Virus record (IMG/VR): IMGVR_UViG_3300043399_000877
Span: 186,001 to 250,000 of that record
DNA length: 64,000 nucleotides
Reading direction: 5' to 3' (one strand)
Positions 27,791 to 62,168 of this stretch are shown here, piece after piece (the first letter of the stretch is position 1; every line of letters starts with the position of its first letter). The position numbers were made by a program, and so were the translations under genes. Under the pieces are notes generated by a model, which was given only the letters and a program-made list of their open reading frames with translations, had not been told where the DNA came from and searched no databases.

Positions 27791-27798
27791 TATAAATA
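27791..27798 (+). promoter_or_regulatory. T4-type late promoter TATAAATA
   Basis: Exact consensus 33 nt upstream of the gp6 start. Confidence 0.8.
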
Positions 27799-45442: not shown

Positions 45443-47506
45443 ATGTCATACACAATAAATTTTACCGACAGTGTTAACAAAGGATCCATTGTTGTTGAAG
45501 ATGGAACAATAAACGTTGAAACCAGCTTGAGACTTCCTGGAAAGGATACAACCAGTTATGGACCATCAATATTAGAAAATTTTCTTCATATTTTAGAAAA
45601 TTTTGCAAACAACCAAAGTCCATCGAATCCAGTCGAAGGACAATTGTGGTATGACACATCTATCGGTGTTGATCAATTAAAAATATATAATGGCACAAAC
45701 TGGATAAGTGCCAGCGGCGTAAAAAAAGGTATAAGCCAGCCAGCAGTTGCGCAAAGTAGCACAGGCGATCTTTGGGTCAACACAACAACACAACAGGTTT
45801 TTGTGTTTTCTGGAGCAGCTTGGGTGTTGGTCGGACCGGAATTTTCTGATGGAACTGTTTCTGGAACGCGATATCAAACAATCATCTCCAGTGATAACAC
45901 AGAAGTTCCGGTAATTGTGTCTTATATACAAGACATTCCGGTTATGATTTTAAGTAAAAATGATTTTATACCTAAGCAAGTCATACCGGGATTTTCTAGA
46001 ATATATCCAGGAACAAACTTAAATCAAAACATATACGCAAAATATCGGGGAGTCGCTGAAAGCGCCGAACGATTAGTATACGGGTCAACATCTTTTTCAG
46101 CAGACACGGTTGTACGTAAAGATATTGAAAACACGTTATCAAAACCTTTAAGAATTAGAAATAATTCCGGATTGGATGTCGGTGAAACACAGACACTCAC
46201 TCTCACTGTTGAAGGAACATCCAGTGTTATAACCCATAGAGCAACTGGGTCGTCATTAGATTTCAGAATAAACGACACTGGCGGAATAACAAACGTAGTA
46301 AGAATTAAATCTGGTGTATCTGCACCGGTAGTTGGAATAAACAACCTTAGCCCAACTGAAGCCTTGGATGTGGTGGGAAATATAAAGTCATCTGGTAGAC
46401 TATTTTTAAGTGGCAATGCCGGCAGTAGTTCTATAAGTTCTGGTACACTCGTAGTAACCGGTGGTGTTGGTATCAGCCAGAATATGTTTGTTGGCGGTGT
46501 TCTAGATGTAAACGGTACAACATCAAAGATAAAAAACATAGAACCGAAAACATCTGGTACATTTAACATTGGGTCAGAAGTTGCAAAGTTTAACAACATT
46601 TATGCAAATAAGTTTGTTGGATCCTTTGAGGGTAACATAACCGGTAACATTGAAGGAACTTCATCTGTTGCTACCAAACTGGCAACAGTTACTACGTTTA
46701 GCCTAACCGGTGATGTTGTATCAGACAGTGTAACTTTTGACGGACAAGCTGGTGGCACTGTAAAAGTATTCAATACTGAAATAAGCACTGGATTTATAGA
46801 AAATAAACCGCTTGAATCGCAAAATATATATCCTGGAGACGAAATTCTTATAAATCGCCCAACTGTTGGGTTGTTTAGGGTACCACAATCAAAGTTAGTA
46901 TCAACTGTTCCAGTAACACCGTACGGTACAATTGTTGCCTTTGCTGGTAGAATAGCACCACCGGGTTGGGAGTTGTGTGACGGTCGAGAAATATTTTTTG
47001 CAGGACAAGCACCGGTGGGAATAGATTACGAACCTTCAGATTATGCTCCGTTTGTTGCAGCAATGGGATATGATTCAACAGATACTGCAAACTGGGGTTG
47101 GGGAATAACAGCCACACCGTCAGCATCTATATTTTTACCAGATTTGCGAGGAAGATTCCTACTAGGACATCTTGCAACAGCACAGACATTACTTAATGAT
47201 CGTGTCACCGACACTACTGCAACAAAAATTGGAAATTACGGCGGTAAACAAAAAACAAAAATAACCACAAATCAGTTACCAAATCACTCACATAGCCTAG
47301 TTAGTAATAACGGAACGCAGTTTTATGCAGTATCAGGTACAACCACCACTGATACTGACGTAGTTGCGTATAACGGCGTGGGGACTGGCACTGGGTCAGC
47401 GTTAACAAGAACACGAGGCGTAAACGGTACTACTGGTGATGATTTTAGCTTAGTAAATCCTTACGCAACAGTCAATTACATAATTTATACTGGAGTTATA
47501 AGATAA
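45443..47506 (+). CDS. Tail fibre protein with tail-collar domain
   Basis: PYGTIVAFAG..APPGWELCDG and PDLRGRF collar motifs; C-terminal NPY..VNYII.TG. Confidence 0.85.
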   Translation: MSYTINFTDSVNKGSIVVEDGTINVETSLRLPGKDTTSYGPSILENFLHILENFANNQSPSNPVEGQLWYDTSIGVDQLKIYNGTNWISASGVKKGISQPAVAQSSTGDLWVNTTTQQVFVFSGAAWVLVGPEFSDGTVSGTRYQTIISSDNTEVPVIVSYIQDIPVMILSKNDFIPKQVIPGFSRIYPGTNLNQNIYAKYRGVAESAERLVYGSTSFSADTVVRKDIENTLSKPLRIRNNSGLDVGETQTLTLTVEGTSSVITHRATGSSLDFRINDTGGITNVVRIKSGVSAPVVGINNLSPTEALDVVGNIKSSGRLFLSGNAGSSSISSGTLVVTGGVGISQNMFVGGVLDVNGTTSKIKNIEPKTSGTFNIGSEVAKFNNIYANKFVGSFEGNITGNIEGTSSVATKLATVTTFSLTGDVVSDSVTFDGQAGGTVKVFNTEISTGFIENKPLESQNIYPGDEILINRPTVGLFRVPQSKLVSTVPVTPYGTIVAFAGRIAPPGWELCDGREIFFAGQAPVGIDYEPSDYAPFVAAMGYDSTDTANWGWGITATPSASIFLPDLRGRFLLGHLATAQTLLNDRVTDTTATKIGNYGGKQKTKITTNQLPNHSHSLVSNNGTQFYAVSGTTTTDTDVVAYNGVGTGTGSALTRTRGVNGTTGDDFSLVNPYATVNYIIYTGVIR

Positions 47507-49167
47507 TGAGTTATCGTATTAATAAAACAGACGGAAGTTTGTTAGTAAATCTTATAGACGGTAGAATTGACCGAGATACTGCTGATGTTGCATTATTTGG
47601 AAAAAATGTAACAAGTTTTGGTGAGCTGCTAAACGAAAACTTTGTAAAATTAACTGAAAACTTTGCTAACTCTGCGCCTCCAGCAAATCCATTACGTGGA
47701 CAACTTTGGTTTGATACTAGTGAAAACCGTATGAAAGTTTTTGACGGGATACAATTTAAATCTACCGATACTACAGTAATAAGTACCTCCATGCCAATTA
47801 TGACAGCCGGAGACCTATGGATAGACTCTAGAAATAGGCAAATATATTTTTCAGATGGTAATGTAACACAACTTATTGGTCCAGCATACACGGCTTCACA
47901 AGGTGAATCCGGTTTTAAAATAGAAACAGTATTTGATGTTGCTGGAAATCCAAAAGTAATAGCCAAATTACTTATTGGTGGATCACTAATAGCAATTTTT
48001 AGTAAAGAAGAATTTACTCCCAATGCTACACAGATAGGGTTTACAGGTAACATAAAAAAAGGTATAAGTTTAAGTTCACTTTATACAGATTTTAAATTTT
48101 TTGGACAAGCTGAATCTGCTACCTCTTTATCTGACCCTGCGGGAAATTTATTAAATATTGACACCTTTTACAAAACAAACCAGAATACGACTGTGACTGG
48201 CTCGTTGTATATAAAGAATAACTCTGGTTTGCGTGTGGGCGCAAACAGCAATCATACAATACAACTATTAAATAACAATATAGTTGCACAAAATAACATA
48301 TTAAATCAAAATTACTCAATAAGAGTGACTAGGGGCAACGGAACAACTGACGCAGTATTTGTTAACACAGCCAATTCAAGAGTGGGTATATTTAGGAACA
48401 ACCCCCAATACACACTTGATGTGGCTGGTGACATGAGAGTATCCGGAAACCTTATAGTAGGCGGCGACAGTATATCACTCCAAGTTGGAAATTTAGAAGT
48501 TGAAAATAAGATAATTTATCTTTCAGTCGCAAATCCGTTGCTTTCCGACACTGACTTAAATGGATCGGGGATGATTATACGGGGATTAGTATCGGATAAA
48601 TCGTTTACATGGAAAGATTTGTCGGATTCCTGGTATAGTTCAGAAAACATTGAGATTCCATCTGACAAAACATACAAAATTGGTGTAGAAAATGTTCTCA
48701 GCCTAACCGCATTGGGCGAATCAGTAACTGATGCACTGGGTTTGCTGAGAATTGGTAAACTTGAATCTTTAGAAGTAGACGAGATACAATTAAACGGCTC
48801 AACAATAACCACTACTACACCTCTCGTAATAGCTAGTTCTGGTAATATAACAATAACCAATAATCGAAAAATAACAGGTTTGGGAAATCCAACATCAAAT
48901 CAAGATGCCTCAAACAAGTTGTATGTTGACAACAGCCACAAATCACAATCAGTTGCACTTTCATTAGATATAACCGGGCTCGATAATACCCAAATAGCAA
49001 GTATAATTGAAGATTTGGTTCCGGCAGCATCCAAAAATGCGAGCGTTACAGCAAAAATACATACAGTTATTAGATCTGGTGCATCAACACTGCGTGGACT
49101 CAAACAATTTATTGTTGTTTCTGGTTCATGGGTTTTTGACCAAGATTTGGTATCTAGCGTTAACTGA
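47506..49167 (+). CDS. Tail fibre / virion structural protein (paralogous N-terminal attachment domain)
   Basis: Shares the 'GK....G...ENF..L.ENFA...P..P..GQ.WFD' N-terminus with 45443 and 49200. Confidence 0.75.
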   Translation: MSYRINKTDGSLLVNLIDGRIDRDTADVALFGKNVTSFGELLNENFVKLTENFANSAPPANPLRGQLWFDTSENRMKVFDGIQFKSTDTTVISTSMPIMTAGDLWIDSRNRQIYFSDGNVTQLIGPAYTASQGESGFKIETVFDVAGNPKVIAKLLIGGSLIAIFSKEEFTPNATQIGFTGNIKKGISLSSLYTDFKFFGQAESATSLSDPAGNLLNIDTFYKTNQNTTVTGSLYIKNNSGLRVGANSNHTIQLLNNNIVAQNNILNQNYSIRVTRGNGTTDAVFVNTANSRVGIFRNNPQYTLDVAGDMRVSGNLIVGGDSISLQVGNLEVENKIIYLSVANPLLSDTDLNGSGMIIRGLVSDKSFTWKDLSDSWYSSENIEIPSDKTYKIGVENVLSLTALGESVTDALGLLRIGKLESLEVDEIQLNGSTITTTTPLVIASSGNITITNNRKITGLGNPTSNQDASNKLYVDNSHKSQSVALSLDITGLDNTQIASIIEDLVPAASKNASVTAKIHTVIRSGASTLRGLKQFIVVSGSWVFDQDLVSSVN

Positions 49168-49199
49168 TAAATACAGTATCACATAAGGACTAAGAACAC

Positions 49200-50714
49200 A
49201 TGGCTTATATAATAAACAGATTTAACGGCACTGTCCTAACTACTGTTGAAGACGGCACCATTAACCAGACAACTGATTTAAAGTTTATTGGTAAAAATTA
49301 CTCCGGGTACGGAGAAGCCCAAAACGAAAATCTTGTTTTCTTGCTAGAAAACTTTGCAGGAGCAACTCCTCCCCCAAGAGCACTAAGTGGTCAAATATGG
49401 TTTGATGCAGTTGCAAGTAAAATCAAGTTTTATGACGGTGTTAAATGGAGAACTGCCGGAACTGCGGAAGTTTCAAATAATGAACCAGTTGGATTAGTTG
49501 AAGGAGATCTGTGGTATAAGCCAACCACACGTCAGCTGTACGCAAGAACTGGTGATAATAACTTTGTTCTTATTGGTCCACAAGTTGCAGGAACGGATAC
49601 AACCCAGCTAGTAAGTGATACTGTAGTAGACTCGACTAGCGTAGTACGTCCCATAATTAAAGCTACCGTAAATGGTGTAGTTGTGTTTGTGACAAGTAAT
49701 ACTGAATTTACGTTGTCTCAAACTGACCCAATACCGGGATTTGACGTTATAAAACGTGGTATTACTTTGGTGAATACTCTTGCTAATACAAACGGTGTTA
49801 CCACAAATGCTGGGCAATCAGGTCAGCCTATTATATGGGGAACAGCTAGTAATGCTCTATTATTAAATGGTAAGACTGCTGCCGATTTTGCTACAATAGA
49901 AAATAATACATTTACTACAGTTGTAAACTTCCCAGATGATGGTATAGATATTGACGATCGTTATAAAATTTACGTTGGTTCCGAAGGTAATGGACGGCAT
50001 GACCTGTATGGTGCTAAACTTATAAGATTTGCCGTTACAAATATTGATAATAACGAAACTACCCCCACACTTATTGTTAAGGTAGCACCAGACGGATTCC
50101 ATCCAGAAACAACCGATTTGTTTAATCTTGGAAAACCGAGTCTGCGTTGGTCCAAAGTATATGCTGAAGAGTTTATTGGAACAGTTTCTCAATCTGATAA
50201 GCTAAAACTCGGAACTAGTTACATAAACGCATCAACTGTTGCAACACCAAATACAATTGCAGCAAGAACTACGGCAGATGAAACAATAAATGGCCAAACA
50301 ATAACTGCTGGCGCGCTAAAGGCAACTTTCTTTGTTGGAAGAGCAACACAGGCACAATACGCAGACTTGGCAGAAAAGTATACTACTGATCAAAAATATC
50401 CAACTGGAACTGTTATGACAGTATGTGATCATGGTGAACATGAAACAGAAGCATGCAGTGAAACATCAATTGCAGTTGGTGTAATTTCAGAAAAACCAGC
50501 ATATCTTATGAATTCAGAAATTGACGGCCAACCATTGGCACTTAAGGGACGAGTTCCGGTAAGAGTTGTTGGACCAGTAAAAAAAGGTCAAGCAGTTTAC
50601 ACTTTTGAGAACGGAACGGCTTCAACAAAAATTACTGGAAGTTTAGTGGGTGTTGCATTGGAATCAAATTTTGATGCTGCTGAGAAGTTAGTTGAGTGTG
50701 TTTTAAAGCTATAA
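49200..50714 (+). CDS. Tail fibre / virion structural protein with C-terminal intramolecular-chaperone (peptidase G2-like) domain
   Basis: Paralogous N-terminus; C-terminal ADLAEKY...VGVISEKPAYLMN...ALKGRVPVRV motif; late TAAATA at 49168-49173. Confidence 0.75.
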   Translation: MAYIINRFNGTVLTTVEDGTINQTTDLKFIGKNYSGYGEAQNENLVFLLENFAGATPPPRALSGQIWFDAVASKIKFYDGVKWRTAGTAEVSNNEPVGLVEGDLWYKPTTRQLYARTGDNNFVLIGPQVAGTDTTQLVSDTVVDSTSVVRPIIKATVNGVVVFVTSNTEFTLSQTDPIPGFDVIKRGITLVNTLANTNGVTTNAGQSGQPIIWGTASNALLLNGKTAADFATIENNTFTTVVNFPDDGIDIDDRYKIYVGSEGNGRHDLYGAKLIRFAVTNIDNNETTPTLIVKVAPDGFHPETTDLFNLGKPSLRWSKVYAEEFIGTVSQSDKLKLGTSYINASTVATPNTIAARTTADETINGQTITAGALKATFFVGRATQAQYADLAEKYTTDQKYPTGTVMTVCDHGEHETEACSETSIAVGVISEKPAYLMNSEIDGQPLALKGRVPVRVVGPVKKGQAVYTFENGTASTKITGSLVGVALESNFDAAEKLVECVLKL

Positions 50715-50738
50715 ATAGTTAAAATTTAGGAAAGTTTA

Positions 50739-51629
50739 ATGACTGTCGGATCATTAATTACAGCAGCAAGATATAATGCTATGCAATCAAAAGTTGCAAA
50801 TGTTCTTGGCGTCGGTCAAGAGCAATTTGGCTATGGGCAAATAGTTTCTAGTACACAACTAAGTGTAAGGTCAGTAGTAACTGAGCTAGAAATGCAAAAG
50901 TTAAAAACAGACATTGAAAAAACACATGTGCACCAATTTGGTGCACTACCTTCCGTACCAACCATAACCAACACACAGCTAATAACAAACGCTCAATATA
51001 CTAGTTATGAAACGGCTTCTGAATCTGTTTTAACAAATAAAAACCTAATACATCCCACACAGGCAAGTTTAGAAAACAAAATACAGTCTACTAGATCTTT
51101 ACCGTGGGGAGTTATTACTAGAGACGATACAATAGTTCATCGTGTAAGAGTACAATTTAATTCGACCAACCATGCAAGATATTTTTTTAATGCTGGTGGA
51201 GAAATAAGATTTTCAGCTAATATAGCAAATGGTACAGGATTCAAAACAGCAAACTGGGCAAATACGCTTAACTCTATAGGAACTGTTCGATTTGATTATA
51301 GAAGGACATATGCCGGGAACCTACCTGTCAGAAACATTGGATTTTTTCAATTAACAACAGAATATCAAACAGTGTTTGTTAAAGGTAATACCGATTTATA
51401 TCAAAATCCAACCGATCCTTATGAGAGCAATTACTATATGATAGATGCTCGACTTAGCGACAGCCTAAAAGATATTATTTTTAGAATAACATTTTATGAT
51501 GGTAACTCAAACGAGTACGATGAGTCAGTAAATGGCACACTAACCAGTAGTGTTTCACAGTATCGCCCGACCGGAAATTACGTCGAGGTCGCAACACCCG
51601 GTTATGTAAACGAAGTGCTGTTAGTATAA
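50739..51629 (+). CDS. Virion structural protein
   Basis: ITAARYN, ARYFFNAGGEIRFS motifs; exact TATAAATA at 50710-50717; AGGA SD. Confidence 0.7.
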   Translation: MTVGSLITAARYNAMQSKVANVLGVGQEQFGYGQIVSSTQLSVRSVVTELEMQKLKTDIEKTHVHQFGALPSVPTITNTQLITNAQYTSYETASESVLTNKNLIHPTQASLENKIQSTRSLPWGVITRDDTIVHRVRVQFNSTNHARYFFNAGGEIRFSANIANGTGFKTANWANTLNSIGTVRFDYRRTYAGNLPVRNIGFFQLTTEYQTVFVKGNTDLYQNPTDPYESNYYMIDARLSDSLKDIIFRITFYDGNSNEYDESVNGTLTSSVSQYRPTGNYVEVATPGYVNEVLLV

Positions 51630-51691
51630 CCATATTTGAGAACTAATACGAGTATCCCAGTTATATACTTTGTATAATATGGGATATTTCT

Positions 51692-52039
51692 ATGGACGAA
51701 AATTTAAAAAAAGCTCTTGAGTATAGCAAGTATATGATAACTCTAAATAATCAAAAAAGAGTTATATTAGAACAATACAACGAAAATTTAAATTTTTACT
51801 TTAACGGTGGAAAATTTTTTATTAGCCAGCAATTATTAAGTTTTTGTAAGACTCTATTAGATTGCAATCAAAAATCTGTTGTATTAATAGATGATGATGG
51901 AATCCCCATAGAGATAGCCGACCTAGAATCATTTTTGAAATCTATACTATCTCAGTATTCATCGGTTTCTAACAAATATTTGGCAGAATACCAAAAATTG
52001 GCAAAACAACGAAGTGTGCAGGGAATAGTTAGCTTATGA
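51692..52039 (+). CDS. Hypothetical protein
   Basis: 115-aa ORF coupled to the glycosyltransferase-like genes; YFNGG.F and IDD...PI.I.DL motifs. Confidence 0.7.
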   Translation: MDENLKKALEYSKYMITLNNQKRVILEQYNENLNFYFNGGKFFISQQLLSFCKTLLDCNQKSVVLIDDDGIPIEIADLESFLKSILSQYSSVSNKYLAEYQKLAKQRSVQGIVSL

Positions 52040-52881
52040 GTCGAGGAGTATTACTTATAGCAAATAATAATTCAAATATCGATTATTTGTTGCAAGCTAT
52101 AAATTCTGCAAAACGCATTAAAAAGTATACTAGTTTGCCAGTGACATTGGTGACTGAAACTCCGGAAATATTAAACACTGAGTATAAAAAAGAAAAAAAC
52201 GTTTTCGATAGAGTCATAGCGTTAAAACCAACTTCTGATTATACTAAAAAAATTTATAGAGATGGGGAAAACCAAACAAAATCGTTGGATTTTAAAAATA
52301 CAACTCGTTCTAAAATATACGATCTTACACCATATGATGAAACATTAGCACTAGATACTGACGTGATTATTTCTAATGACAATTTTTTAAAATGTTTTGA
52401 ACAAAAACACGATTTCTTGATTTATAAAAAGTCTTTTGATGTATGCGCCCACAGACATATAAAAGAATTTGATAACATAGTGGATCAAGGCATAGAGTTC
52501 TATTGGGCTACCTGTGTGTTTTTTAGAAAAACTGCAACTAATGAAATATTTTTTAACTTGATAAAGCACATACACGAAAATTACCTGCATTACAAAAATC
52601 TTTATTATGTTACATCGGGAATTTTTAGAAATGACTTTGTTTTCAGTATAGCTATTCATATTATGAATGGTTACCAAAAAGGAGACTTTGCAAAATCTAT
52701 GCCAGGCACTTTGTACTTTTCTTCTGACAAAGACGAGCTTGTGTATTTGAATGACAATCAATTAATTTTGTTACTTGAAAGCACGTCCAATAAGGAACAG
52801 TCAATAGTATCCCTTACAAACGCAAATGTCCATGTAATGAATAAATTTAGTATTGAAAGAATATTAAAAAATGACAGTTAA
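52036..52881 (+). CDS. GT-A fold nucleotide-diphospho-sugar transferase (GT8-like)
   Basis: DY...A..SAKRIK, TPYDETLALDTD (DxD) and FRND..FSIA motifs. Confidence 0.7.
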   Translation: MSRGVLLIANNNSNIDYLLQAINSAKRIKKYTSLPVTLVTETPEILNTEYKKEKNVFDRVIALKPTSDYTKKIYRDGENQTKSLDFKNTTRSKIYDLTPYDETLALDTDVIISNDNFLKCFEQKHDFLIYKKSFDVCAHRHIKEFDNIVDQGIEFYWATCVFFRKTATNEIFFNLIKHIHENYLHYKNLYYVTSGIFRNDFVFSIAIHIMNGYQKGDFAKSMPGTLYFSSDKDELVYLNDNQLILLLESTSNKEQSIVSLTNANVHVMNKFSIERILKNDS

Positions 52882-53707
52882 TTTTACTATGATGGCACAA
52901 AACAGTGATGTTGATTATGTTCAACAAGCAGCAGTTTGTGCTATGAGTATAAAAAACTCAATACCTGATAGCAAAGTATGCCTAATAACCAACGATGTAG
53001 TACCATCCAAATATAAATCATTATTTTCTGATATAGTAGAAATTCCCTGGGAAGATTTTTCAAAAAACAAAACATGGAAAATACAGAACAGATGGAAAAG
53101 TTATCATGCATGCCCATATGAGTCTACTATAATTTTAGACACTGACATGCTTGTTCTAGATGATATAACAAATTGGTGGAATGAATTACAAAAATATGAT
53201 TTGTATTTTGTTTCAGAACCAAAAACTTATAGACAAAACACGGTATCAAGTGTATATTATCGACAGGCGTTTGTAAATCATCAGTTGCCTAATGTTTATA
53301 CTGGATTTCATTTTTTTAAAAAAACGGATTCAGCACACACATTTTATAAATGGTTAGAACTTGTAATGAATAACTGGGAATTATTTCATGGGCAATTTGC
53401 TGGTGGTGCTTATTTTCAAAAATTCTTAAGCATGGATGTTAGTGCTGCTATTGTTACAAAAATATTAGATTGGGAAAGATTTGTGACTTCCAAAAACGGA
53501 CCTTACTTTGTTCATATGAAATCACAATGCCAAGATTGGAATAAGTTTCTCGGAGATTCATGGCAAACATACGTGAAATCTTTTGTTACTGACAATTTAC
53601 AACTTTATGTTGGCAACTATCGGCAATCTGGAGTATTTCACTATACCGAAGACAGCTTTTTAACTCCAAACATAATAAAAAAATATGAAAAGGTGTTGGG
53701 AATATGA
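52871..53707 (+). CDS. GT-A fold nucleotide-diphospho-sugar transferase (GT8-like), paralogue of 52036
   Basis: DY...A...AMSIK, CPYESTIILDTD (DxD), FVHMK and FHY motifs. Confidence 0.7.
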   Translation: MTVNFTMMAQNSDVDYVQQAAVCAMSIKNSIPDSKVCLITNDVVPSKYKSLFSDIVEIPWEDFSKNKTWKIQNRWKSYHACPYESTIILDTDMLVLDDITNWWNELQKYDLYFVSEPKTYRQNTVSSVYYRQAFVNHQLPNVYTGFHFFKKTDSAHTFYKWLELVMNNWELFHGQFAGGAYFQKFLSMDVSAAIVTKILDWERFVTSKNGPYFVHMKSQCQDWNKFLGDSWQTYVKSFVTDNLQLYVGNYRQSGVFHYTEDSFLTPNIIKKYEKVLGI

Positions 53708-54273
53708 CACAAACCTTTACGGTTCCCATGTATGTGCATTTTGATGAAAGTGGAAATGTATTAAAAATAACAAACTATAAATCTGAAGACAGTAGTTATA
53801 TCACAGTTACCTATCATGACGTAGAAAAAATTCTTGATGGTACCGAAACTATGAGTAATTTTTCTGTTAAAAAAGATAGTAGTAATATTTTTAAATTAGT
53901 AAAAAATTTAGCATATGATACAAACAACTATGATGTTGATCAGCGCATATATGCAATTCCTAAAAATAATCCCGGAGCAACTTTAAAAATATATCAGGAT
54001 GTAAAAAATAAAGAATGGATTTTTGACGTTGATCCTGATTTTAGAAAGTCGTATTTTGAAAATCAGTTTATAATTGATAACAGGATGTTTTTTAGTATAA
54101 CTGCAAGCGGTGATCCTAATGTCCTTTATCGATTTGTACAAATTAACTTTGCAGACGTAGTAAAACACAAAAAAGTTTTAAAGTTCATTACAGATGATGA
54201 ACAAAATAAAAATATTGAAATATACACGCATAAGAAAATAGACTCTTATACTCACGAGGTAATAAATGAATAA
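53704..54273 (+). CDS. Hypothetical protein
   Basis: 189-aa ORF coupled on both sides; FSIT..GDPN.LY motif. Confidence 0.7.
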   Translation: MTQTFTVPMYVHFDESGNVLKITNYKSEDSSYITVTYHDVEKILDGTETMSNFSVKKDSSNIFKLVKNLAYDTNNYDVDQRIYAIPKNNPGATLKIYQDVKNKEWIFDVDPDFRKSYFENQFIIDNRMFFSITASGDPNVLYRFVQINFADVVKHKKVLKFITDDEQNKNIEIYTHKKIDSYTHEVINE

Positions 54274-55183
54274 GAAATTTAAAGTTTTAGACTATGATAT
54301 AATATACTTGAGTTACGATGAACCAAATGCTGAAAAGAATTATGCGGATTTACTTAAAAAAGTTCCCTGGGCAAAACGAGTTCACGGTGTTGAGGGGTCT
54401 GATGCTGCACATAAGGCTTGTGCAAATTTAAGCGAAACCGATAGATTTATCACAGTTGACGGTGATAACATAATTCGCAGTGAGTTTTTATCTCAAGAAA
54501 TCGACTTTGATCAACATAAAGATTTGGAAAGTTGTGTTATAAGTTGGACAGCCCGAAATACCATAAACGGATTAATGTATGGAAATGGCGGAATAAAATG
54601 TTGGCCAAAGAAATATGTTTTAAACATGAAAACTCATGAAAATGCTGATCCAAACAATCCACATGCACAAGTTGATTTTTGTTGGGATGTGGAATACATA
54701 CAAATGAACAGTTGTTTTAGTGAAATACACAACAATGCAACGCCACAACAAGCATGGCGCGCTGGTTTTCGTGAAGGCGTTAAAATGGCACTGGATCGTG
54801 GTGTAAAACCTTCTATTGATGTTTTTCATAAAAATCATTGGAAAAATATGCATAGACTTTACATTTGGTTAATGGTTGGGGCAGACGCAGCGAATGGTGA
54901 TTGGGCAATATATGGTGCCCGACAGGGGCTAATTAAAACAATGCTCAGCGATTGGGATTACGTAAATGTTAGGAATTTCAAATGGCTCAACGATTTTTGG
55001 ATTAACGAAGTACAACATGTATCTGATATAAATGCGGATACTATCGAGTTTGGGCATATAATAAAAAACGAGTTGTCGCTGCCCATATCTGAAATGCCAC
55101 TTAACTCAGATCAAAGTAAGTTTTTTAAAACAGTTTACCAAAATCCACCTAGAGTTTCTCAAAAAATAATAGACAAAGAGTAA
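54266..55183 (+). CDS. Glycosyltransferase-like protein (GT-A, DxD)
   Basis: YDIIYLSYDEPNAE.NY, SD.AHKA, RFITVDGDN and AWRAGFREGVK motifs. Confidence 0.65.
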   Translation: MNKKFKVLDYDIIYLSYDEPNAEKNYADLLKKVPWAKRVHGVEGSDAAHKACANLSETDRFITVDGDNIIRSEFLSQEIDFDQHKDLESCVISWTARNTINGLMYGNGGIKCWPKKYVLNMKTHENADPNNPHAQVDFCWDVEYIQMNSCFSEIHNNATPQQAWRAGFREGVKMALDRGVKPSIDVFHKNHWKNMHRLYIWLMVGADAANGDWAIYGARQGLIKTMLSDWDYVNVRNFKWLNDFWINEVQHVSDINADTIEFGHIIKNELSLPISEMPLNSDQSKFFKTVYQNPPRVSQKIIDKE

Positions 55184-55187
55184 TATA

Positions 55188-56723
55188 ATGACTAACATTG
55201 ATAGCACAAATTGGGATAGAAACTCATCCGGTGAAATTATTAGAAATACTGAAAATGTAGAAAAATTAAAACCAATTTTGAATGCAGTTGGTCCGGGATT
55301 TTGTTTGGCAAAATTTACCCAAGTTAGTCTTCACTTGGGCACAGGATTGGTCCATAGTTGCCATCACCCAACACCACATAAGATTCCATTAGATGAACTA
55401 GAAAAAAATCCTGCTGCTTTGTTTAATACTGCTATTTTAAAATCTGCAAGATCAGAAATGTTAACTGGTGGTAAACCGTCTGAATGTGACTATTGTTGGA
55501 GAATTGAAAAAAATGGCGGTACAAGTGACCGGCATCATAAAAGTCTTGAACCCTGGGCATTGGATAACTTTGAAAATGTTATCTCACTTTCTGGTAAGGA
55601 ATTTATAAAACCAACCTACTTGGAAGTCAGCTTTGGTAACACTTGTAATTTAGCGTGTGCGTATTGCGGACCAGAGTTTAGTAGTAAGTGGGTTGAAGAG
55701 TTAAAACAGCAAGGGCCAATAATTATACGTGATTCCGGAAATAGCGATCAATGGGCGCAAGGCTGGCAGGATCTTGAAAATTTGTCATACCTAAATCGAG
55801 AGCATAATCCGTATGTTGAAGCTTTTTGGTCATGGTTTCCTGAAATATACCCAACTTTAAAACACTTTAGGATTACTGGCGGTGAACCGTTATTAAACAA
55901 AAATACTATGAAAAGTTTGGATTATATAATAGAAAATCCTCGTCCAGATCTCGAGTTGAGTATTAACACAAACTTATCGGTACCAGATGCAGTATGGGAT
56001 AGATTCTTAAATAAGATCATAACTCTTGAAAAGTCTTCAAAATTTAAAAAGATAACAATATTTACAAGCTTTGAGGGCTGGGAAGAACGGGCAACCTACA
56101 GTAGGCACGGTCTTGACTTTCAAAAACTTATATCTCGCTTTGAAGAACTTCTTGAAAAAACCGGTGTTCGATGTGTTGTAATGGCAACATATAACATACT
56201 TGCAATAACAAGTTTTCAAAAAGTTCTTGAATGGATCTTAGATCTAAAAGCTCGATTTAATAAAAATCACTATCGCACAGCACTGTATGAAAAAACAGGA
56301 TATGACTTTACAAATTCAGTTAAAAATATAGAAAATAGTTTTAGAGTGGGAATAGACGTTCCATATTTAAGACATCCTGAATGGTTAGATGTAATGTATT
56401 GTTCAGATGAGTTATTTGAAAAATACATGTTTCCAACATACGAGTTCATGGCAAAAAATACTGGGCATACTGAAGTCATGCAACACTATGGTTTTGAACC
56501 AGTTGAAACCAGTAAATTTGAAAGAATTGTTATGAATCGAGCATATTTTTTAAAAAAAGGGTTAGACGACAGTGTTCGAGATGATATTGTTAAAAATAGA
56601 TCAAAATTTTATGATTTTATAAACCAATTAGATTCTAGAAGAAATACTGATTTTGCTAAAACTTATCCAGAAATGGAAAATTTTTATAAATTGTGTAAAG
56701 AAAATAGGAATTTGTTAAAATGA
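55188..56723 (+). CDS. Radical SAM protein with N-terminal auxiliary Fe-S (twitch-like) motifs
   Basis: CNLACAYC (CxxxCxxC), ITGGEPL, INTN; N-terminal CLAK...SCHHP and ECDYCW. Confidence 0.9.
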   Translation: MTNIDSTNWDRNSSGEIIRNTENVEKLKPILNAVGPGFCLAKFTQVSLHLGTGLVHSCHHPTPHKIPLDELEKNPAALFNTAILKSARSEMLTGGKPSECDYCWRIEKNGGTSDRHHKSLEPWALDNFENVISLSGKEFIKPTYLEVSFGNTCNLACAYCGPEFSSKWVEELKQQGPIIIRDSGNSDQWAQGWQDLENLSYLNREHNPYVEAFWSWFPEIYPTLKHFRITGGEPLLNKNTMKSLDYIIENPRPDLELSINTNLSVPDAVWDRFLNKIITLEKSSKFKKITIFTSFEGWEERATYSRHGLDFQKLISRFEELLEKTGVRCVVMATYNILAITSFQKVLEWILDLKARFNKNHYRTALYEKTGYDFTNSVKNIENSFRVGIDVPYLRHPEWLDVMYCSDELFEKYMFPTYEFMAKNTGHTEVMQHYGFEPVETSKFERIVMNRAYFLKKGLDDSVRDDIVKNRSKFYDFINQLDSRRNTDFAKTYPEMENFYKLCKENRNLLK

Positions 56724-57916
56724 AAATACCTATGTACTTTGACTTTATTCAAAATGACGGAAATATAGAAAAGTTAAATGCAGTTGATATCACAATAAGT
56801 AAAAAATGTGCTGAGGGAAGCAATGCCTTAACAATGTTAGAAATTCAAGATCCTAAATCTGAAATAGAATTTATAAAAGAAAATTATTCAGGGTTTTTTT
56901 ATTATCCTATTTATTGGGTTTATAATGACATATATTTGAAATCTTTAACAATTCCAAAATTTGTGTTAAATGCAATTTCTAAAAATAAAGCGAAGATATT
57001 AATAGTTAACCTGTATGAGGGTTACGATATTTCAAATGCAGTTCGAGAGAATGTGTTATTAAAATTTAGTTTATCATTTGAAAATATTGTGCTTATGACT
57101 GGAAATAAATTTAAAATAGACGGGATAAACTCGATATACAATAATTATTGGGAACACATAGCGTCTTATGGGAACAAGTCACCGAGTAGTCTGTTTAACA
57201 AAGCACATAATTCAATATTTACTAAGAATAACTACCGGAAACACAAATTTATTTGCCTTCAAAGAAGACCAAAGCCATATCGTGTTGCATTATATTCTGA
57301 ATTATTTCCATATCGAGATATGGGAATTTTAACTTTAGGTCGTGGTGATTATGGAACCCACACATATAACAGATTTTATGATATAAATTTGTTTGGTGAC
57401 TCTTTCAAAGATAGCCATAAAAAATTTAAAAAAAACAAGTTGATATCAACGTTGCCCGCTGTGTATGATGTAGATGTTTCTTTAGAAAATCCTGCTTTTG
57501 ACGACGACGATGAAAAGTTTTATTCAGCATATCTGCATATAGTTTCTGAAACTTTTTTTGAAAAAGATACTAATACAACATTTTTTAGTGAAAAAGTATT
57601 CAAACCAATAGTATGTTTTCAACCATTTATAATGTTTAACCAGCACAATACTTTGGAAGAGTTTCGTTCGTTGGGATATGAAACTTTTCCTGACGTCATT
57701 GATGAAGCATATGACAAAATTCAAGATGATGAAAAAAGATTTTACACAGCGGTATCGTCAACTATTAATTTTATAAACCAAAACAACAAAACACTTTCTA
57801 AAATAATGAAAAAATTATTTCCAGTAATGGCACATAATTTTTACAATTTATTTTACACGGCTAATACAAAACAGGCTAAAATAAAAGCTGAACTGATATC
57901 TTTATTATATAACTAA
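56720..57916 (+). CDS. Putative GT-B glycosyltransferase (ET.F..SEK..KP family)
   Basis: HIVSETFF...FSEKVFKPI...QPF...L..LGYETF..VIDEAYD. Confidence 0.55.
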   Translation: MKIPMYFDFIQNDGNIEKLNAVDITISKKCAEGSNALTMLEIQDPKSEIEFIKENYSGFFYYPIYWVYNDIYLKSLTIPKFVLNAISKNKAKILIVNLYEGYDISNAVRENVLLKFSLSFENIVLMTGNKFKIDGINSIYNNYWEHIASYGNKSPSSLFNKAHNSIFTKNNYRKHKFICLQRRPKPYRVALYSELFPYRDMGILTLGRGDYGTHTYNRFYDINLFGDSFKDSHKKFKKNKLISTLPAVYDVDVSLENPAFDDDDEKFYSAYLHIVSETFFEKDTNTTFFSEKVFKPIVCFQPFIMFNQHNTLEEFRSLGYETFPDVIDEAYDKIQDDEKRFYTAVSSTINFINQNNKTLSKIMKKLFPVMAHNFYNLFYTANTKQAKIKAELISLLYN

Positions 57917-60590: not shown

Positions 60591-61565
60591 ATGATTGTAA
60601 ATGGATCACATCTTATAGGTTATTTATCAGACAAATTTACTGTATTTGATCTCTATGGTTATGACTTGTCGGTCTTTGACATTGACTCTATTAAACAAAA
60701 TAGCGTTGTATACGTAGATGATGAAATGATGTGTTTTAATCGTATGTTGCGCGTGTTTTTAAATTTAATAAAAGATAGAGATGACATAGTTTGGGTAGTC
60801 AAAATACCTTTTGTGTATGAAAAAATTATTAGTCTCGGTAAACGTGCAGTATTAGAACCTTATTTTCATATTATAGATGACCTCATGGGAATGAAAATTC
60901 AAAATGAACCTAGGGTAATTCCCATATACGGAGATAAAACATTTTTTTGTTTGAACAGAAATTTCAACGATCAACGACAAACATTATTAAAACAATTAAA
61001 AAAACATGATTTAATAAAATTTGGATATGTAACAGCAAACTCTGAAAGATTTAAAGATAGACATTTATTCGTGTGTGATCCCATGGATAACTATGTTGCG
61101 TCCACGTCTGGCTACGAGCGATGTAATGAAACAGACCTAATCTCATTAAATGTTAAAAATTTTTATAATATAGCAGCTAAACCAGGACAAATAGCAGTGG
61201 TTGTTGAGACCGGTTATTACCCATTGGAATACAAAAGGTTTTTCCCTACAGAAAAAACAATAATTCCGTTTATAACACACCGATTGCCTTTGATACACGG
61301 TGACTCCGGCATCCTTCGTAATTTAGAAAAGGATGGTATCGACATATTTAGAGATTTAATTAACCACTCCTATGATTTAATGGAATACCACGATCCCAAA
61401 AAGTCTAAAAAAATGATCAAAGATAACATTGAAATATTAAAAAACGGAGTTAACATACAAAAATTACAAAAACGATTAAAAAGAAATTATGATTTTTTAA
61501 CAAATCAGTGGTTTGAAGTCAAGTTGCAAAACTTTATAACTAATATTTCACAAAATCTCGATTAA
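60591..61565 (+). CDS. Putative GT-B glycosyltransferase (ET...TEK family), divergent
   Basis: CLNRN....R..L, VVETGY...FPTEKTIIPF and DIF.DLINHSYD motifs; TAAATA at 60580-60585 just before the ATG. Confidence 0.5.
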   Translation: MIVNGSHLIGYLSDKFTVFDLYGYDLSVFDIDSIKQNSVVYVDDEMMCFNRMLRVFLNLIKDRDDIVWVVKIPFVYEKIISLGKRAVLEPYFHIIDDLMGMKIQNEPRVIPIYGDKTFFCLNRNFNDQRQTLLKQLKKHDLIKFGYVTANSERFKDRHLFVCDPMDNYVASTSGYERCNETDLISLNVKNFYNIAAKPGQIAVVVETGYYPLEYKRFFPTEKTIIPFITHRLPLIHGDSGILRNLEKDGIDIFRDLINHSYDLMEYHDPKKSKKMIKDNIEILKNGVNIQKLQKRLKRNYDFLTNQWFEVKLQNFITNISQNLD

Positions 61566-62168
61566 TCTGCAATCAGGATATATTACTTTTTTTGATTGAA
61601 ACTTTCCGGTTTTTTTGTATCGTTTTAATGCCCTAGAGCCCCTGACACACTCTTCTGGATTTAGCTTATAATGATAACCCAACGTAAAACTTTTTTGATT
61701 TTGCCAAGGGAGTATGCTTAAATCTCGCCCGTCATATCTTAATTTTGACAAAACACAATAGTCATCGTACGAGTCAGTTAATATAGCACCACCACGGCCA
61801 ATATCAACTGGTTTTCCGTATCCAAAACTCAAGCATTGTAATTGGCCAGCCTTATACATATTTGGTTCAAGTTTTCTTGCACTATCCCAAATTCTGGTAT
61901 TATAAAACTGATACTCGCCAACCCATTCTTCGTCTATCAAATTATATGATATTTTTAGTTTATGCATAAGTTGGGGTATGCTTAAATATGTATATGCTGT
62001 AAAATGACAATCTTTTATGTTATCAAGTATCATACACAATTCTATTGCGTGAGTACAGCAATCGGTTGATACGGCATATTTTGCACCAGAAAACTCAGCA
62101 AGTTCATCTTCAAATTTTTTAATTTTTTCAAACATACCATATTTAATACCATAAAATAACACAGTCAT
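61548..62168 (-). CDS. Truncated DegT/DnrJ/EryC1/StrS-family PLP aminotransferase
   Basis: FE.ELAEFSGAKYAV..D.CT.AI, WDSAR and LSFGYGK...GRGGAILTD (Schiff-base Lys); only about 200 aa; real start probably at MFEKIKK. Confidence 0.8.
   Translation of the reverse strand: MTVLFYGIKYGMFEKIKKFEDELAEFSGAKYAVSTDCCTHAIELCMILDNIKDCHFTAYTYLSIPQLMHKLKISYNLIDEEWVGEYQFYNTRIWDSARKLEPNMYKAGQLQCLSFGYGKPVDIGRGGAILTDSYDDYCVLSKLRYDGRDLSILPWQNQKSFTLGYHYKLNPEECVRGSRALKRYKKTGKFQSKKVIYPDCRLIEIL

What the first reader, a model, noticed from the sequence alone, without database searches (positions are those of the whole stretch)
51692..55183. Glycosyltransferase-like genes run on directly from the tail-fibre operon
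Two GT8-like paralogues (LDTD) and a DGD-type transferase follow the last fibre gene on the same strand with overlapping start and stop codons. A paralogue of the third begins at 63412. The position suggests glycosylation of fibres or capsid. Virion glycosylation is established for some mycobacteriophages and giant viruses but is poorly described for T4-like jumbo phages.
Basis: partly seen in the sequence, partly recalled or inferred. Interest (0 to 1): 0.6.

Follow-up and report, generated by a model that had tools for sequence, protein, structure and literature searches.

The report
Glycosyltransferase operon beside phage tail fibres
Right after the tail-fibre genes, a freshwater jumbo phage carries a conserved five-gene operon with three divergent sugar-transferring enzymes; it opens a ~36-kb island holding 14 radical-SAM enzyme genes, and what gets glycosylated (virion, host surface or another product) is still open.

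Summary
The observation largely holds. Window 51692-55183 holds five tightly overlapping + strand genes, not three: A0 (115 aa), A (281), B (278), X (189) and C (305).

- **A and B:** they are paralogues. B folds confidently (pLDDT 93.7) into a GT-A domain whose nearest solved structures are GT8/GT24 enzymes (glycogenin, UGGT, LgtC). Its DxD is invariant.
- **C:** it folds confidently (pLDDT 93.5) into a weaker GT2-like GT-A domain plus a helical domain, with an invariant DGD. It belongs to a large unnamed family: more than 8000 clusters at 90% identity and 1284 at 50%.
- **Annotation:** none of the five matches Pfam, PHROGs or NCBIfam.

The cassette does not overlap the last fibre-module gene. 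A 62-nt spacer with a hairpin separates them. In about half of the relatives a consensus sigma-70-type promoter sits in front of A0 and never in front of the fibre paralogues.

Gene order fibres-A0-A-B-(X)-C holds in every one of the 80 related viral contigs whose flank reaches those genes, and in Ralstonia phage RsoM2USA.

The cassette leads a sugar and radical-SAM island (14 rSAM genes, a UDP-sugar dehydrogenase). A similar region was described for pelagimyophages, where host O-chain modification was proposed.

The acceptor is unresolved. I favour a phage-made protein, weakly. DNA glycosylation is unlikely.

The parts
45443..50714 (+). Three receptor-binding fibre paralogues (687, 553 and 504 aa; 45443-47506, 47506-49167, 49200-50714). 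They share an N-terminal anchor domain and have different C-termini. Context for the finding, not part of the cassette.
   Evidence: PHROG tail, tail-fibre and virion-protein hits. The shared N-terminal sequence is visible. Orthologues precede the cassette in the related contigs.
50739..51629 (+). Last gene of the fibre module (296 aa, no family match). It is often duplicated in relatives. A TATAAATA box lies just upstream at 50710-50717.
51630..51691 (+). 62-nt spacer between the fibre module and the cassette. It folds into a hairpin (arms TATCCCA / TGGGATA) that encloses TTTGTATAATATGG. No strong sigma-70 promoter is present in this phage.
   Evidence: Sequence. Fold -17.2 kcal/mol, z -3.1. 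Best -35/-10 match is 8 of 12. In relatives, 40 of 79 have TTGACA-N16-18-TATAnT here.
51692..52039 (+). A0: 115-aa protein of unknown function and first gene of the cassette. It is conserved with the cassette.
   Evidence: No family hit. Found in 86 ORFs of the related loci, always directly before A.
52036..52881 (+). A: divergent GT8-like GT-A glycosyltransferase candidate (281 aa), a paralogue of B, with DxD at D107/D109.
   Evidence: Invariant D107, D109, H266 and K270. hhalign to the B family gives probability 100%, E 4e-41. Its own profile against PDB is only weak: SseK1 E 0.15, glycogenin E 0.3.
52871..53707 (+). B: divergent GT8-like GT-A glycosyltransferase candidate (278 aa), with DxD at D90/D92.
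   Evidence: AF2 pLDDT 93.7. Foldseek PDB top hits are the UGGT catalytic domain, glycogenin, LgtC and LARGE1, E ~3e-8, TM ~0.5. The profile hits glycogenin at E 4e-4 across the DxD. 411 homologues.
53704..54273 (+). X: 189-aa protein of unknown function, found in about 60% of related cassettes. It is the least conserved member (median 29% identity).
54266..55183 (+). C: founding example here of a large unnamed family. It has an N-terminal GT-A (GT2-like) domain at residues 4-157, with an invariant DGD at D65/D67, and a C-terminal helical domain. It is the most conserved gene of the module (median 67% identity).
   Evidence: AF2 pLDDT 93.5. VIA Z 9.7 to 8.5 to B4GALNT1, STIV A197, SpsA and SunS. 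Foldseek matches SunS, ThuS and PBCV-1 A64R at E ~1e-3. In BFVD, apart from unnamed proteins, only glycosyltransferases appear. More than 8000 clusters at 90% and 1284 at 50%. Invariant residues; conservation.
55188..56723 (+). First of 14 radical-SAM genes: an N-terminal-twitch radical-SAM protein (511 aa), 4 nt after C.
   Evidence: NCBIfam NF033640 E 1e-92 and Pfam PF04055.
56720..57916 (+). 398-aa protein of unknown function that ends the operon. It overlaps the rSAM gene by 4 nt.
61548..62168 (-). 206-aa ORF with a partial DegT/DnrJ/EryC1 sugar-aminotransferase match.
   Evidence: Pfam PF01041 E 3.5e-12.
62175..63419 (+). Nucleotide-sugar (UDP-glucose/GDP-mannose type) dehydrogenase, 414 aa.
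   Evidence: PF00984, PF03721 and TIGR03026 E 1.6e-42.
63412..64000 (+). Start of a 652-aa protein (C2). By eye it has four degenerate repeats of the first part of the C fold. A complete C-like domain with DGD follows beyond the window end.

Best explanation
**What it is.** Window 51692-55183 is a five-gene operon, A0-A-B-X-C. It continues into a twitch-type radical-SAM gene and a 398-aa gene.
- Three of its products are soluble, cytoplasmic, metal-dependent (DxD) GT-A glycosyltransferase candidates.
- A and B are divergent GT8-like paralogues.
- C belongs to a very large, unnamed GT2-like family with an added helical domain.

**Where it sits.** The operon is the leading edge of a single-strand island of about 36 kb (G000 237.7-273.5 kb). 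The island holds a UDP-sugar dehydrogenase, a sugar-aminotransferase fragment, a second C-type protein, 14 radical-SAM enzymes (8 of the N-terminal-twitch type, one B12-dependent), two PP-loop ATPases and an Asp/Asn beta-hydroxylase.

**Inferred mechanism.** The transferases take nucleotide sugars, possibly tailored by island enzymes, and build a short glycan in the cytoplasm on a conserved acceptor made by the phage. Virion proteins of the adjacent fibre and baseplate module are the leading candidates.

**Shown versus inferred.**
- Shown: gene structure, folds, invariant DxD, synteny and island content.
- Inferred: catalytic activity, sugar donor, acceptor, and any link to the rSAM enzymes.

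**My odds.**
- These are active glycosyltransferases: about 0.85.
- The cassette is its own transcription unit: about 0.7.
- The acceptor is a phage protein or virion: about 0.35-0.4.
For: **Fold and motifs**
- B: pLDDT 93.7, with GT8/GT24 structures as top Foldseek hits at E ~3e-8. The profile hits glycogenin at E 4e-4 across the DxD.
- A is homologous to B.
- C: pLDDT 93.5. Its GT-A domain scores Z 9.7-8.5 to glycosyltransferases, including the viral ones STIV A197 and PBCV-1 A64R. In the BFVD list, apart from unnamed proteins, only glycosyltransferases appear.
- The DxD aspartates are invariant in all three families.

**Context**
- Sugar metabolism: a nucleotide-sugar dehydrogenase and a DegT fragment lie nearby.
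- In cells, C homologues sit among GT2, GT4, GT28-like and PMT_2 genes.

**Arguments for a phage-side acceptor**
- The order fibres-A0-A-B-(X)-C holds in every one of the 80 related viral contigs whose flank reaches those genes, and in RsoM2USA at 45% identity.
- C is far more conserved (median 67%) than the fibres (33-46%). That fits a constant acceptor better than variable host O-antigens.
- No island protein has a membrane-spanning segment: no flippase, GtrA/C or Wzx/Wzy.
Against: - No assay or virion data exist.
- No curated family matches A, B or C.
- C's structural matches are only moderately above background. Nucleotidyltransferases of the same fold (MobA, IspD) score Z ~8.
- The cassette is separated from the fibre genes by a spacer and hairpin.
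- In 40 of 79 relatives it is preceded by a consensus sigma-70-type promoter that the fibre paralogues lack (0 of 172). In T4-type phages such promoters drive early rather than late genes; that rule is established knowledge and was not tested here.
- All syntenic relatives form one clade, so the adjacency may be inherited and not functional.
- C occurs without fibre genes in bacterial chromosomes.
- The fibres carry no obvious glycosylation tracts.
- The published reading of a similar pelagimyophage region is host O-chain modification.
Confidence: 0.4

Rival explanations
1. Host envelope remodelling. The transferases act at the inner face of the host membrane on lipid-linked LPS, O-antigen or capsule intermediates, as LgtC and other GT8 enzymes do. 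This changes the surface of the infected cell, for example to exclude competing phages or stop progeny re-adsorbing. The module sits in the host-recognition region because both co-evolve with the host surface.
For: - GT8-type enzymes such as LgtC are among B's structural neighbours.
- Pelagimyophage 'host recognition clusters' hold tail fibres, GT8-type transferases, UDP-glucose dehydrogenase and rSAM cassettes, and were interpreted this way (PMC7029224).
- An early-type promoter precedes A0 in about half of the relatives.
- In Bdellovibrionota, C homologues lie in glycan loci with GT2 and PMT_2 genes.
Against: - The cassette is not hypervariable. Gene order is the same in all 80 related contigs, and C keeps a median 67% identity across phages that presumably infect different hosts.
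- No membrane protein, flippase or polymerase lies in the island.
- The host is unknown.
Confidence: 0.3
2. One pathway with the radical-SAM battery. The transferases and the 14 rSAM enzymes jointly make a heavily tailored glycosylated product. This could be a modified peptide or protein (glycocin/RiPP-like, perhaps the conserved 74-aa protein encoded just before the rSAM run) or an unusual sugar-derived small molecule.
For: - C is followed directly by an rSAM gene. All 14 rSAM genes of the genome lie on the same strand within 30 kb downstream.
- rSAM genes lie near C in 60 of 80 viral loci and 16 of 32 Bdellovibrionota loci.
- C's best Foldseek hits include the peptide S-glycosyltransferases SunS and ThuS.
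- A 74-aa ORF before the rSAM run is strongly conserved, E down to 5e-41. A gene of the same size holds the same position next to a distant C homologue.
- SPASM/twitch rSAMs and a B12-rSAM resemble peptide maturases in NCBIfam sub-threshold hits.
Against: - The SunS match is weak (E ~1e-3, TM ~0.3) and not specific.
- Rhodobacterales have C with no rSAM nearby (0 of 23).
- In this phage about 6 kb of other genes, some on the opposite strand, separate the cassette from the main rSAM run.
- The 74-aa protein has no family match and is too conserved for a typical RiPP core.
- The binding test could not be run.
Confidence: 0.17
3. DNA glycosylation. The transferases add sugars to modified bases in phage DNA to evade restriction, as T4 alpha- and beta-glucosyltransferases do.
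For: - Phage glycosyltransferases classically serve this role (established knowledge).
- An early-type promoter in relatives would fit.
- PP-loop/QueC-like genes lie in the island.
Against: - The only ThyA-family gene is an ordinary thymidylate synthase (E ~1e-82 to 1e-90 to ThyA structures). No dCMP/dUMP hydroxymethylase is evident.
- There is no TGT/DpdA homologue.
- The folds are GT-A. The T4 enzymes have a GT-B fold (established knowledge).
- C homologues in cells sit in glycan loci and not in DNA-modification loci.
Confidence: 0.05
4. The proteins keep a GT-A fold but are not sugar transferases. C might be a nucleotidyltransferase that activates a sugar or a phosphonate, or the proteins might be non-catalytic scaffolds.
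For: - Nucleotidyltransferases (MobA, IspD, HddC, PntC) score nearly as well as glycosyltransferases for C.
- No curated glycosyltransferase model matches.
Against: - The invariant DxD sits just after a beta-strand, as expected for a GT-A DxD.
- The top structural ranks and nearly all named BFVD neighbours are glycosyltransferases.
- B's matches are specifically GT8/GT24.
Confidence: 0.08

Closest known systems
CAZy GT8 / GT24 retaining GT-A glycosyltransferases (glycogenin, LgtC, UGGT catalytic domain, LARGE1)
   Same: B's model superposes best on these (E ~3e-8, TM ~0.5). Its profile aligns to glycogenin across the DxD. The DxD is invariant, and A is B's paralogue.
   Different: There is no match to Pfam PF01501 even at E 10, and identity is only 10-14%. 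The genome has a separate canonical GT8 gene elsewhere. The third metal ligand has not been verified, and the acceptor is unknown.
GT2-like GT-A enzymes, including the viral ones (SpsA, SunS/ThuS, PBCV-1 A64R, STIV A197)
   Same: C's residues 4-157 adopt the same fold (Z 9.7-7.7), with the DxD in the expected place. A64R glycosylates a viral capsid protein according to its PDB title.
   Different: The matches are weak (Foldseek E ~1e-3). There is no PF00535 match. C has an extra conserved helical domain. Its own set of invariant residues is E19, W113, R169/E170 and D207. Nucleotidyltransferases score similarly.
Pelagimyophage 'host recognition cluster' (Zaragoza-Solas et al. 2020, PMC7029224)
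   Same: Both are T4-type aquatic phages with tail fibres, GT8-type transferases, UDP-glucose dehydrogenase and radical-SAM cassettes in one region after the structural genes. A T4-like marine genome with 12 rSAM genes was also noted earlier (PMC5332604).
   Different: That region is described as hypervariable and its transferases are recognisable as GT8. Here the cassette has fixed order, C is highly conserved, and none of its proteins matches a curated family. The genome is 382 kb, and its only relative in the phage collection searched is RsoM2USA.
Virion glycosylation systems (mycobacteriophages, Freeman et al. 2023; chlorovirus and mimivirus glycan machinery)
   Same: The virus encodes cytoplasmic glycosyltransferases and sugar-nucleotide enzymes placed beside structural genes. 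This comparison rests on my own knowledge; the Freeman paper was seen only as a citation.
   Different: No glycan has been demonstrated here. The fibres have no evident acceptor tracts. The large rSAM complement has no counterpart in those systems as far as I know.
T4 alpha/beta-glucosyltransferases and phage GtrABC seroconversion modules
   Same: They are phage-encoded sugar transferases.
   Different: The T4 enzymes have a GT-B fold and need hydroxymethyl-cytosine. This genome shows only a normal thymidylate synthase. Gtr modules are membrane proteins, and none is present here.

Membership tests
GT8 (CAZy; Pfam PF01501 Glyco_transf_8) | GT-A fold, with GT8 enzymes as the nearest structures | tested here: met
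   B: Foldseek top hits are UGGT, glycogenin, LgtC and LARGE1, E ~3e-8, probability 1.00. A: only through homology to B.
GT8 (CAZy; Pfam PF01501 Glyco_transf_8) | Conserved DxD metal and nucleotide-sugar motif after the fourth strand | tested here: met
   Invariant D90/D92 in B (40 sequences) and D107/D109 in A (27 sequences). In B they follow strand 85-89, and they align to glycogenin's DxD.
GT8 (CAZy; Pfam PF01501 Glyco_transf_8) | Sequence match to the family model at its curated threshold | tested here: not met
   No PF01501 hit for A or B at E up to 10. A genome-wide scan finds PF01501 only at G000 124297-124743.
GT8 (CAZy; Pfam PF01501 Glyco_transf_8) | C-terminal histidine as third metal ligand (H-x-x-G-x-x-K-P-W type) | tested here: inconclusive
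   B has nearly invariant H215, K217 and W223. A has invariant H266 and K270. No structural superposition of these residues was available.
GT8 (CAZy; Pfam PF01501 Glyco_transf_8) | Retaining transfer from a UDP-sugar | not testable with these tools
   Needs an enzyme assay.
GT2-like GT-A glycosyltransferases (Pfam PF00535 clan) | GT-A fold with a DxD at the end of the fourth strand | tested here: met
   C residues 4-157: Z 9.7 (B4GALNT1), 9.4 (STIV A197), 8.5 (SpsA, SunS). Invariant D65/D67 follow strand 60-65.
GT2-like GT-A glycosyltransferases (Pfam PF00535 clan) | Sequence match to a curated GT model | tested here: not met
   C has no Pfam, NCBIfam or PHROG hit and no PDB sequence hit even with a profile. 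The PF00535 genome scan hits only two other genes.
GT2-like GT-A glycosyltransferases (Pfam PF00535 clan) | Distinguishable from nucleotidyltransferases that share the fold | tested here: inconclusive
   MobA, IspD, HddC and PntC score Z 7.5-8.2, about one unit below the best transferases.
Virion-glycosylation systems | Transferase genes encoded next to virion structural genes | tested here: met
   The cassette directly follows the fibre module here, in the 80 related contigs and in RsoM2USA.
Virion-glycosylation systems | Glycan present on virion proteins and dependent on these genes | not testable with these tools
   Needs virions. The RsoM2USA virion proteome paper does not address glycans.
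Virion-glycosylation systems | Recognisable acceptor tracts in structural proteins (Ser/Thr-rich or collagen-like) | tested here: not met
   There are no G-X-Y runs and no strongly Ser/Thr-rich stretches in the fibres, the 296-aa protein or the 4522-aa protein. This is a weak criterion.
Pelagimyophage-type host recognition cluster | Tail fibres, glycosyltransferases, UDP-glucose dehydrogenase and rSAM cassettes in one region | tested here: met
   compared with PMC7029224.
Pelagimyophage-type host recognition cluster | Hypervariable gene content between related phages | tested here: not met
   The cassette order does not change across the 80 related contigs, and C has a median 67% identity. Content downstream of C does vary.
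T4-type DNA glucosylation | GT-B fold transferase plus a hydroxymethyl-pyrimidine pathway | tested here: not met
   The folds are GT-A. The sole ThyA-family gene is a true thymidylate synthase.
Phage GtrABC seroconversion | Membrane-embedded GtrA flippase and GtrC transferase | tested here: not met
   No 19-residue window reaches a mean hydropathy of 1.9 in any protein from G000 236 to 274 kb.

The most novel reading that the evidence does not exclude
The glycosyltransferase cassette and the 14 radical-SAM enzymes form one phage-encoded post-translational modification system. It would install a radical-SAM-tailored glycan, or glycan plus crosslinks, on a phage protein: the receptor-binding fibres or the strongly conserved 74-aa protein encoded before the rSAM run. 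That would be a kind of virion or effector maturation chemistry not described for any phage. It would also be widespread in aquatic jumbo phages, with relatives in Bdellovibrionota.
Probability: 0.15. Interest if true: 0.85.

Novelty: new variant of a known kind. Interest (0 to 1): 0.5.

Why it matters
Phage glycosyltransferases next to host-recognition genes are common in aquatic T4-type phages, but nobody has shown what they glycosylate.

This case defines three unannotated families. One of them, C, has more than a thousand 50%-identity clusters and no Pfam model. It occurs in phages, Bdellovibrionota and Rhodobacterales.

The case also ties these families to one of the densest radical-SAM gene clusters seen in a virus.

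It points to a culturable handle: Ralstonia phage RsoM2USA ORF349-354. With it, the competing ideas (virion glycosylation, host-surface remodelling, a new rSAM-glycan product) can be separated by ordinary knock-out, glycoproteomic and enzyme assays.

Tried and rejected
**Searches that found nothing**
- Pfam, PHROGs and NCBIfam gave nothing usable for A0, A, B, X or C. The only hits were one weak unnamed PHROG for B and chance-level Pfam hits.
- Single-sequence PDB searches for B and C were blank. A 50-sequence C profile against PDB gave only chance hits. A's own profile gave sub-significant hits: SseK1 E 0.15, glycogenin E 0.3.
- Nucleotide and protein searches of 50,697 phage records found only RsoM2USA.
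- Atlas searches for X and for the 282-aa protein gave only unnamed viral clusters. For the 282-aa protein there was also a weak methyltransferase lead.

**Ideas tested and dropped or left open**
- T4-type late promoter in front of A0: TATAAATA occurs only twice in the window, both times before structural genes, and not before A0. Only 1 of 86 relatives has it upstream of A0.
- Collagen-like or mucin-like acceptor tracts in the fibres: none found.
- 7-deazaguanine or hydroxymethyl-base DNA modification as a context: no TGT/DpdA, and the ThyA is ordinary.

**Steps that could not be run**
It gives no evidence either way.
- No RNA runs hold the locus, so read laying was not used and expression timing is untested.
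- The internal repeats of the 652-aa C2 protein were seen by eye only. BLAST self-comparison did not report them.

Full report
**Setting**

The window is bases 186001-250000 of a 381,886-bp IMG/VR virus record, estimated complete. Near-identical DNA occurs in freshwater, estuary and aquaculture metagenomes. No RNA runs hold it.

Upstream of the finding lies a myovirus baseplate and fibre module:
- hub and lysozyme-like proteins, wedge proteins, and a gp6-like 1132-aa wedge protein (PHROG E 1e-301);
- a 4522-aa ORF;
- three paralogous proteins of 687, 553 and 504 aa. They share an N-terminal anchor and carry tail-fibre or tail-protein-like C-termini;
- a 296-aa protein with no family match.

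'Tail-fibre operon' is therefore a fair description of what precedes the finding.

**Checking the observation**

The span 51692-55183 contains five + strand genes:

| Gene | Coordinates | Length |
|---|---|---|
| A0 | 51692-52039 | 115 aa |
| A | 52036-52881 | 281 aa |
| B | 52871-53707 | 278 aa |
| X | 53704-54273 | 189 aa |
| C | 54266-55183 | 305 aa |

- Successive genes overlap by 4, 11, 4 and 8 nt.
- A radical-SAM gene starts 4 nt after C, and a 398-aa gene overlaps that one by 4 nt.
- The quoted motifs are present: LDTD in A and B, DGD in C.
- The cassette does not overlap the last fibre-module gene. A 62-nt spacer folds into a hairpin of -17.2 kcal/mol, z -3.1.
- The 'paralogue of the third at 63412' is the start of a 652-aa protein. 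Its real C-like domain lies beyond the window end (E 1e-33 to 3e-36). The part inside the window resembles C only faintly (E 0.003).

**What the proteins are**

No curated library recognises A0, A, B, X or C.

B:
- It has 411 homologues.
- An alignment of 40 gave an AlphaFold model at pLDDT 93.7.
- Its best solved-structure matches are all GT8/GT24-type GT-A enzymes: the UGGT catalytic domain, glycogenin, LgtC and LARGE1, at E about 3e-8 and TM about 0.5.
- The same profile hits glycogenin sequences at E 4e-4, aligned across the DxD.
- D90 and D92 are invariant and follow strand 85-89.

A:
- It is homologous to B: BLASTP E 6e-9; profile-profile probability 100%.
- D107/D109 are invariant.
- Its own profile reaches PDB only at sub-significant levels.
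- Pfam's GT8 model matches neither A nor B, although it finds a canonical GT8 gene elsewhere in the genome.
- 'GT8-like' is therefore justified as a fold and distant-homology statement, not as family membership.

C:
Most are 70-77% identical.
- An exhaustive search counts 1284 clusters at 50% identity with E up to 0.001.
- Its model (pLDDT 93.5) has an N-terminal GT-A domain (residues 4-157) and a conserved helical C-terminal domain.
- A Foldseek-independent search gives Z 9.7 to 8.5 against B4GALNT1, STIV A197, a chondroitin synthase, SpsA and SunS. Nucleotidyltransferases of the same fold score about one unit lower.
- Foldseek hits are weak (E about 1e-3): SunS/ThuS, PBCV-1 A64R and TarP.
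- In the viral structure library, beyond two true homologues, all named neighbours are glycosyltransferases.
- D65 and D67 are invariant and follow strand 60-65. E19, W113, R169/E170 and D207 are also invariant.
- I read C as a new GT2-like GT-A family, with residual doubt about transferase versus nucleotidyltransferase chemistry.

**Conservation of the arrangement**

- In the 80 IMG/VR contigs fetched through C (59-75% identity) the order is always (208-aa gene), 687, 553, 504, 296 (once or twice), A0, A, B, (X), C, wherever the flank reaches those genes. This is followed by rSAM genes and/or the C2 and 282-aa genes.
- The same order holds in the isolated Ralstonia phage RsoM2USA (ORF355-347, C 45.7% identical). 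There the cassette follows virion genes confirmed by mass spectrometry.
- Several 'MAG' contigs assigned to unrelated bacteria carry the same fibre genes. They are evidently mis-binned phage DNA.
- C is the most conserved gene of the neighbourhood, at a median 67% identity. The fibres have 33-46%, A and B 44-45%, and X 29%.

**Is it part of the fibre operon?**

Probably not in the simple sense.
- In 40 of 79 relatives a strict TTGAC[AT]-N16-18-TA[TC]A[ACT]T promoter lies within 60 nt upstream of A0.
- It is found upstream of none of 172 fibre-paralogue genes and upstream of 5 of 102 copies of the 296-aa gene.
- These 40 sites make up 40 of only 96 + strand matches in 1.45 Mb.
- In T4-type phages such promoters drive early genes and TATAAATA drives late genes. 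This is established knowledge and was not tested here.
- In this window TATAAATA occurs only twice, against 8 expected. Both copies lie just upstream of structural genes, at 27791 and 50710.
- The window's own spacer lacks a good sigma-70 promoter (best 8 of 12). It has TTTGTATAATATGG inside the hairpin, so timing in this particular phage is open.

**Wider context**

- All 14 radical-SAM genes of the genome lie on the + strand between G000 241,296 and 271,422, starting directly after C. Eight pass the curated cut-off of NCBIfam NF033640 (N-terminal twitch rSAM), and one is B12-dependent.
- The island also holds a nucleotide-sugar dehydrogenase, a DegT fragment, two QueC-like PP-loop proteins and an Asp/Asn beta-hydroxylase. 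Opposite-strand polyamine genes follow.
- No island protein has a predicted membrane span.
- A 74-aa ORF just before the main rSAM run is strongly conserved (E to 5e-41). A gene of the same size and position accompanies a distant C homologue.
- rSAM genes lie near C in 60 of 80 viral loci and 16 of 32 Bdellovibrionota loci, but in 0 of 23 Rhodobacterales loci.
- In a Bacteriovoracaceae chromosome C sits among GT2, PMT_2 and rSAM genes. In Sulfitobacter it sits next to GT4, a GT28-like protein and a caspase-Sel1 protein.

**Function**

- The cellular neighbourhoods, the sugar-nucleotide genes and the folds all point to glycan synthesis.
- DNA glycosylation is unlikely. The only ThyA-family gene is a normal thymidylate synthase, there is no TGT/DpdA, and the folds are GT-A.
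- Between a phage-made acceptor and the host envelope the evidence is indirect.
  - For a constant, phage-side acceptor: the fixed order, the high conservation of C and the absence of membrane components.
  - For the host-envelope reading: the separate early-type promoter, the LPS-type relatives of GT8 and the published interpretation of pelagimyophage host-recognition clusters.
- I give about 0.35-0.4 to a virion or phage-protein acceptor, 0.3 to host-envelope glycans, 0.17 to a joint rSAM-glycan product, and the small remainder to DNA or non-transferase roles.

**Comparison with the literature**

- Zaragoza-Solas et al. 2020 described tail fibres, glycosyltransferases (GT8 the commonest), UDP-glucose dehydrogenase and rSAM cassettes together in pelagimyophages.
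- Nishimura et al. 2017 noted a T4-like marine genome with 12 rSAM genes.
- The RsoM2USA paper left ORF349-354 as hypothetical proteins.
- The kind of region is therefore known, and its chemistry and acceptor are not.
- New here: the fold-level identification of three unannotated families, the size and host range of the C family, the fixed cassette with its own promoter, and the concentration of every rSAM gene of the genome behind it.

**Limits**

- No enzyme, virion or expression data exist.
- The structure-based calls for C are moderate.
- A's assignment rests on its homology to B.
- Promoter timing is inferred from T4.
- The complex prediction could not be run.

Noticed in passing
window 55188-56723 and G000 252403-271464 (L004, L007): All 14 radical-SAM genes of the 382-kb genome lie on one strand within 30 kb directly downstream of gene C. 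Eight pass the NF033640 (N-terminal twitch rSAM) cut-off, and one is a B12-binding rSAM. The function is unknown.
   Followed up: partly
L004:2186-2410 (G000 252186-252410, just past the window end): A 74-aa ORF between the 282-aa gene and the first gene of the rSAM run is very strongly conserved in relatives (phmmer E 5e-41 to 1e-27). It has no family match. It could be a substrate or partner of the rSAM enzymes. A 74-aa gene holds the same position in a distant locus.
   Followed up: partly
window 51627-51694; the same position in L088-L167: The spacer before A0 folds into a hairpin that reaches the start codon (-17.2 kcal/mol, z -3.1). In relatives the same spot carries a near-consensus sigma-70 promoter, often followed by a short palindrome and an AGGAG ribosome site.
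   Followed up: partly
window 31230-44798: A giant 4522-aa ORF sits in the baseplate and fibre module. It has three CBM_5_12 carbohydrate-binding modules and an FG-GAP repeat, which suggests an adhesin-like virion protein. The RsoM2USA counterpart is a 2541-aa structural protein.
   Followed up: partly
window 27791-27798 and 50710-50717: TATAAATA occurs only twice in 64 kb, against about 8 expected. Both copies lie 20-40 nt upstream of structural-gene starts (27832 and 50739), as expected for T4-type late promoters.
   Followed up: partly
L024-L087 (genome-contig loci): The C family also occurs in bacterial chromosomes. In Roseibium, Ruegeria, Sulfitobacter and Tateyamaria isolates it lies next to GT4, a GT28-like protein and caspase-domain proteins. 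In many Bdellovibrionota it lies with C2-like, 282-aa-like, rSAM, GT2 and PMT_2 genes.
   Followed up: partly
L008-L022: Contigs filed under MAGs of unrelated taxa (Neomarinimicrobiota, Rickettsiales, Bifidobacterium, Fischerella, Polynucleobacter and others) carry the same fibre genes and cassette. They look like jumbo-phage contigs mis-binned into bacterial genomes.
   Followed up: no
window 63412-64000, continuing to G000 251370: The 652-aa C2 protein appears by eye to contain four degenerate repeats of the first ~60 residues of the C fold, with the DxD lost (recurring TEMFW motifs). A complete C-like domain with DGD follows. BLAST self-comparison did not report the repeats.
   Followed up: partly
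G000 271451-279226 (L007): The end of the island holds a QueC-like PP-loop protein and an Asp/Asn beta-hydroxylase. On the opposite strand follow a saccharopine-dehydrogenase-like enzyme, an AMP-binding enzyme and an Orn/Arg-type decarboxylase, a polyamine-type set.
   Followed up: no
G000 124297-124743, 150680-151150 and 178551-178838 (outside the window): The genome also encodes a canonical Pfam GT8 domain (in a 577-aa ORF) and two GT2 domains (one in a 1331-aa ORF). The phage therefore carries at least six or seven glycosyltransferase-like genes.
   Followed up: no
L004:1351-2199 (G000 251351-252199): A 282-aa protein travels with C2 in phages and with C in Bdellovibrionota. The only lead is a weak resemblance to SAM-dependent methyltransferases in the protein atlas.
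   Followed up: partly
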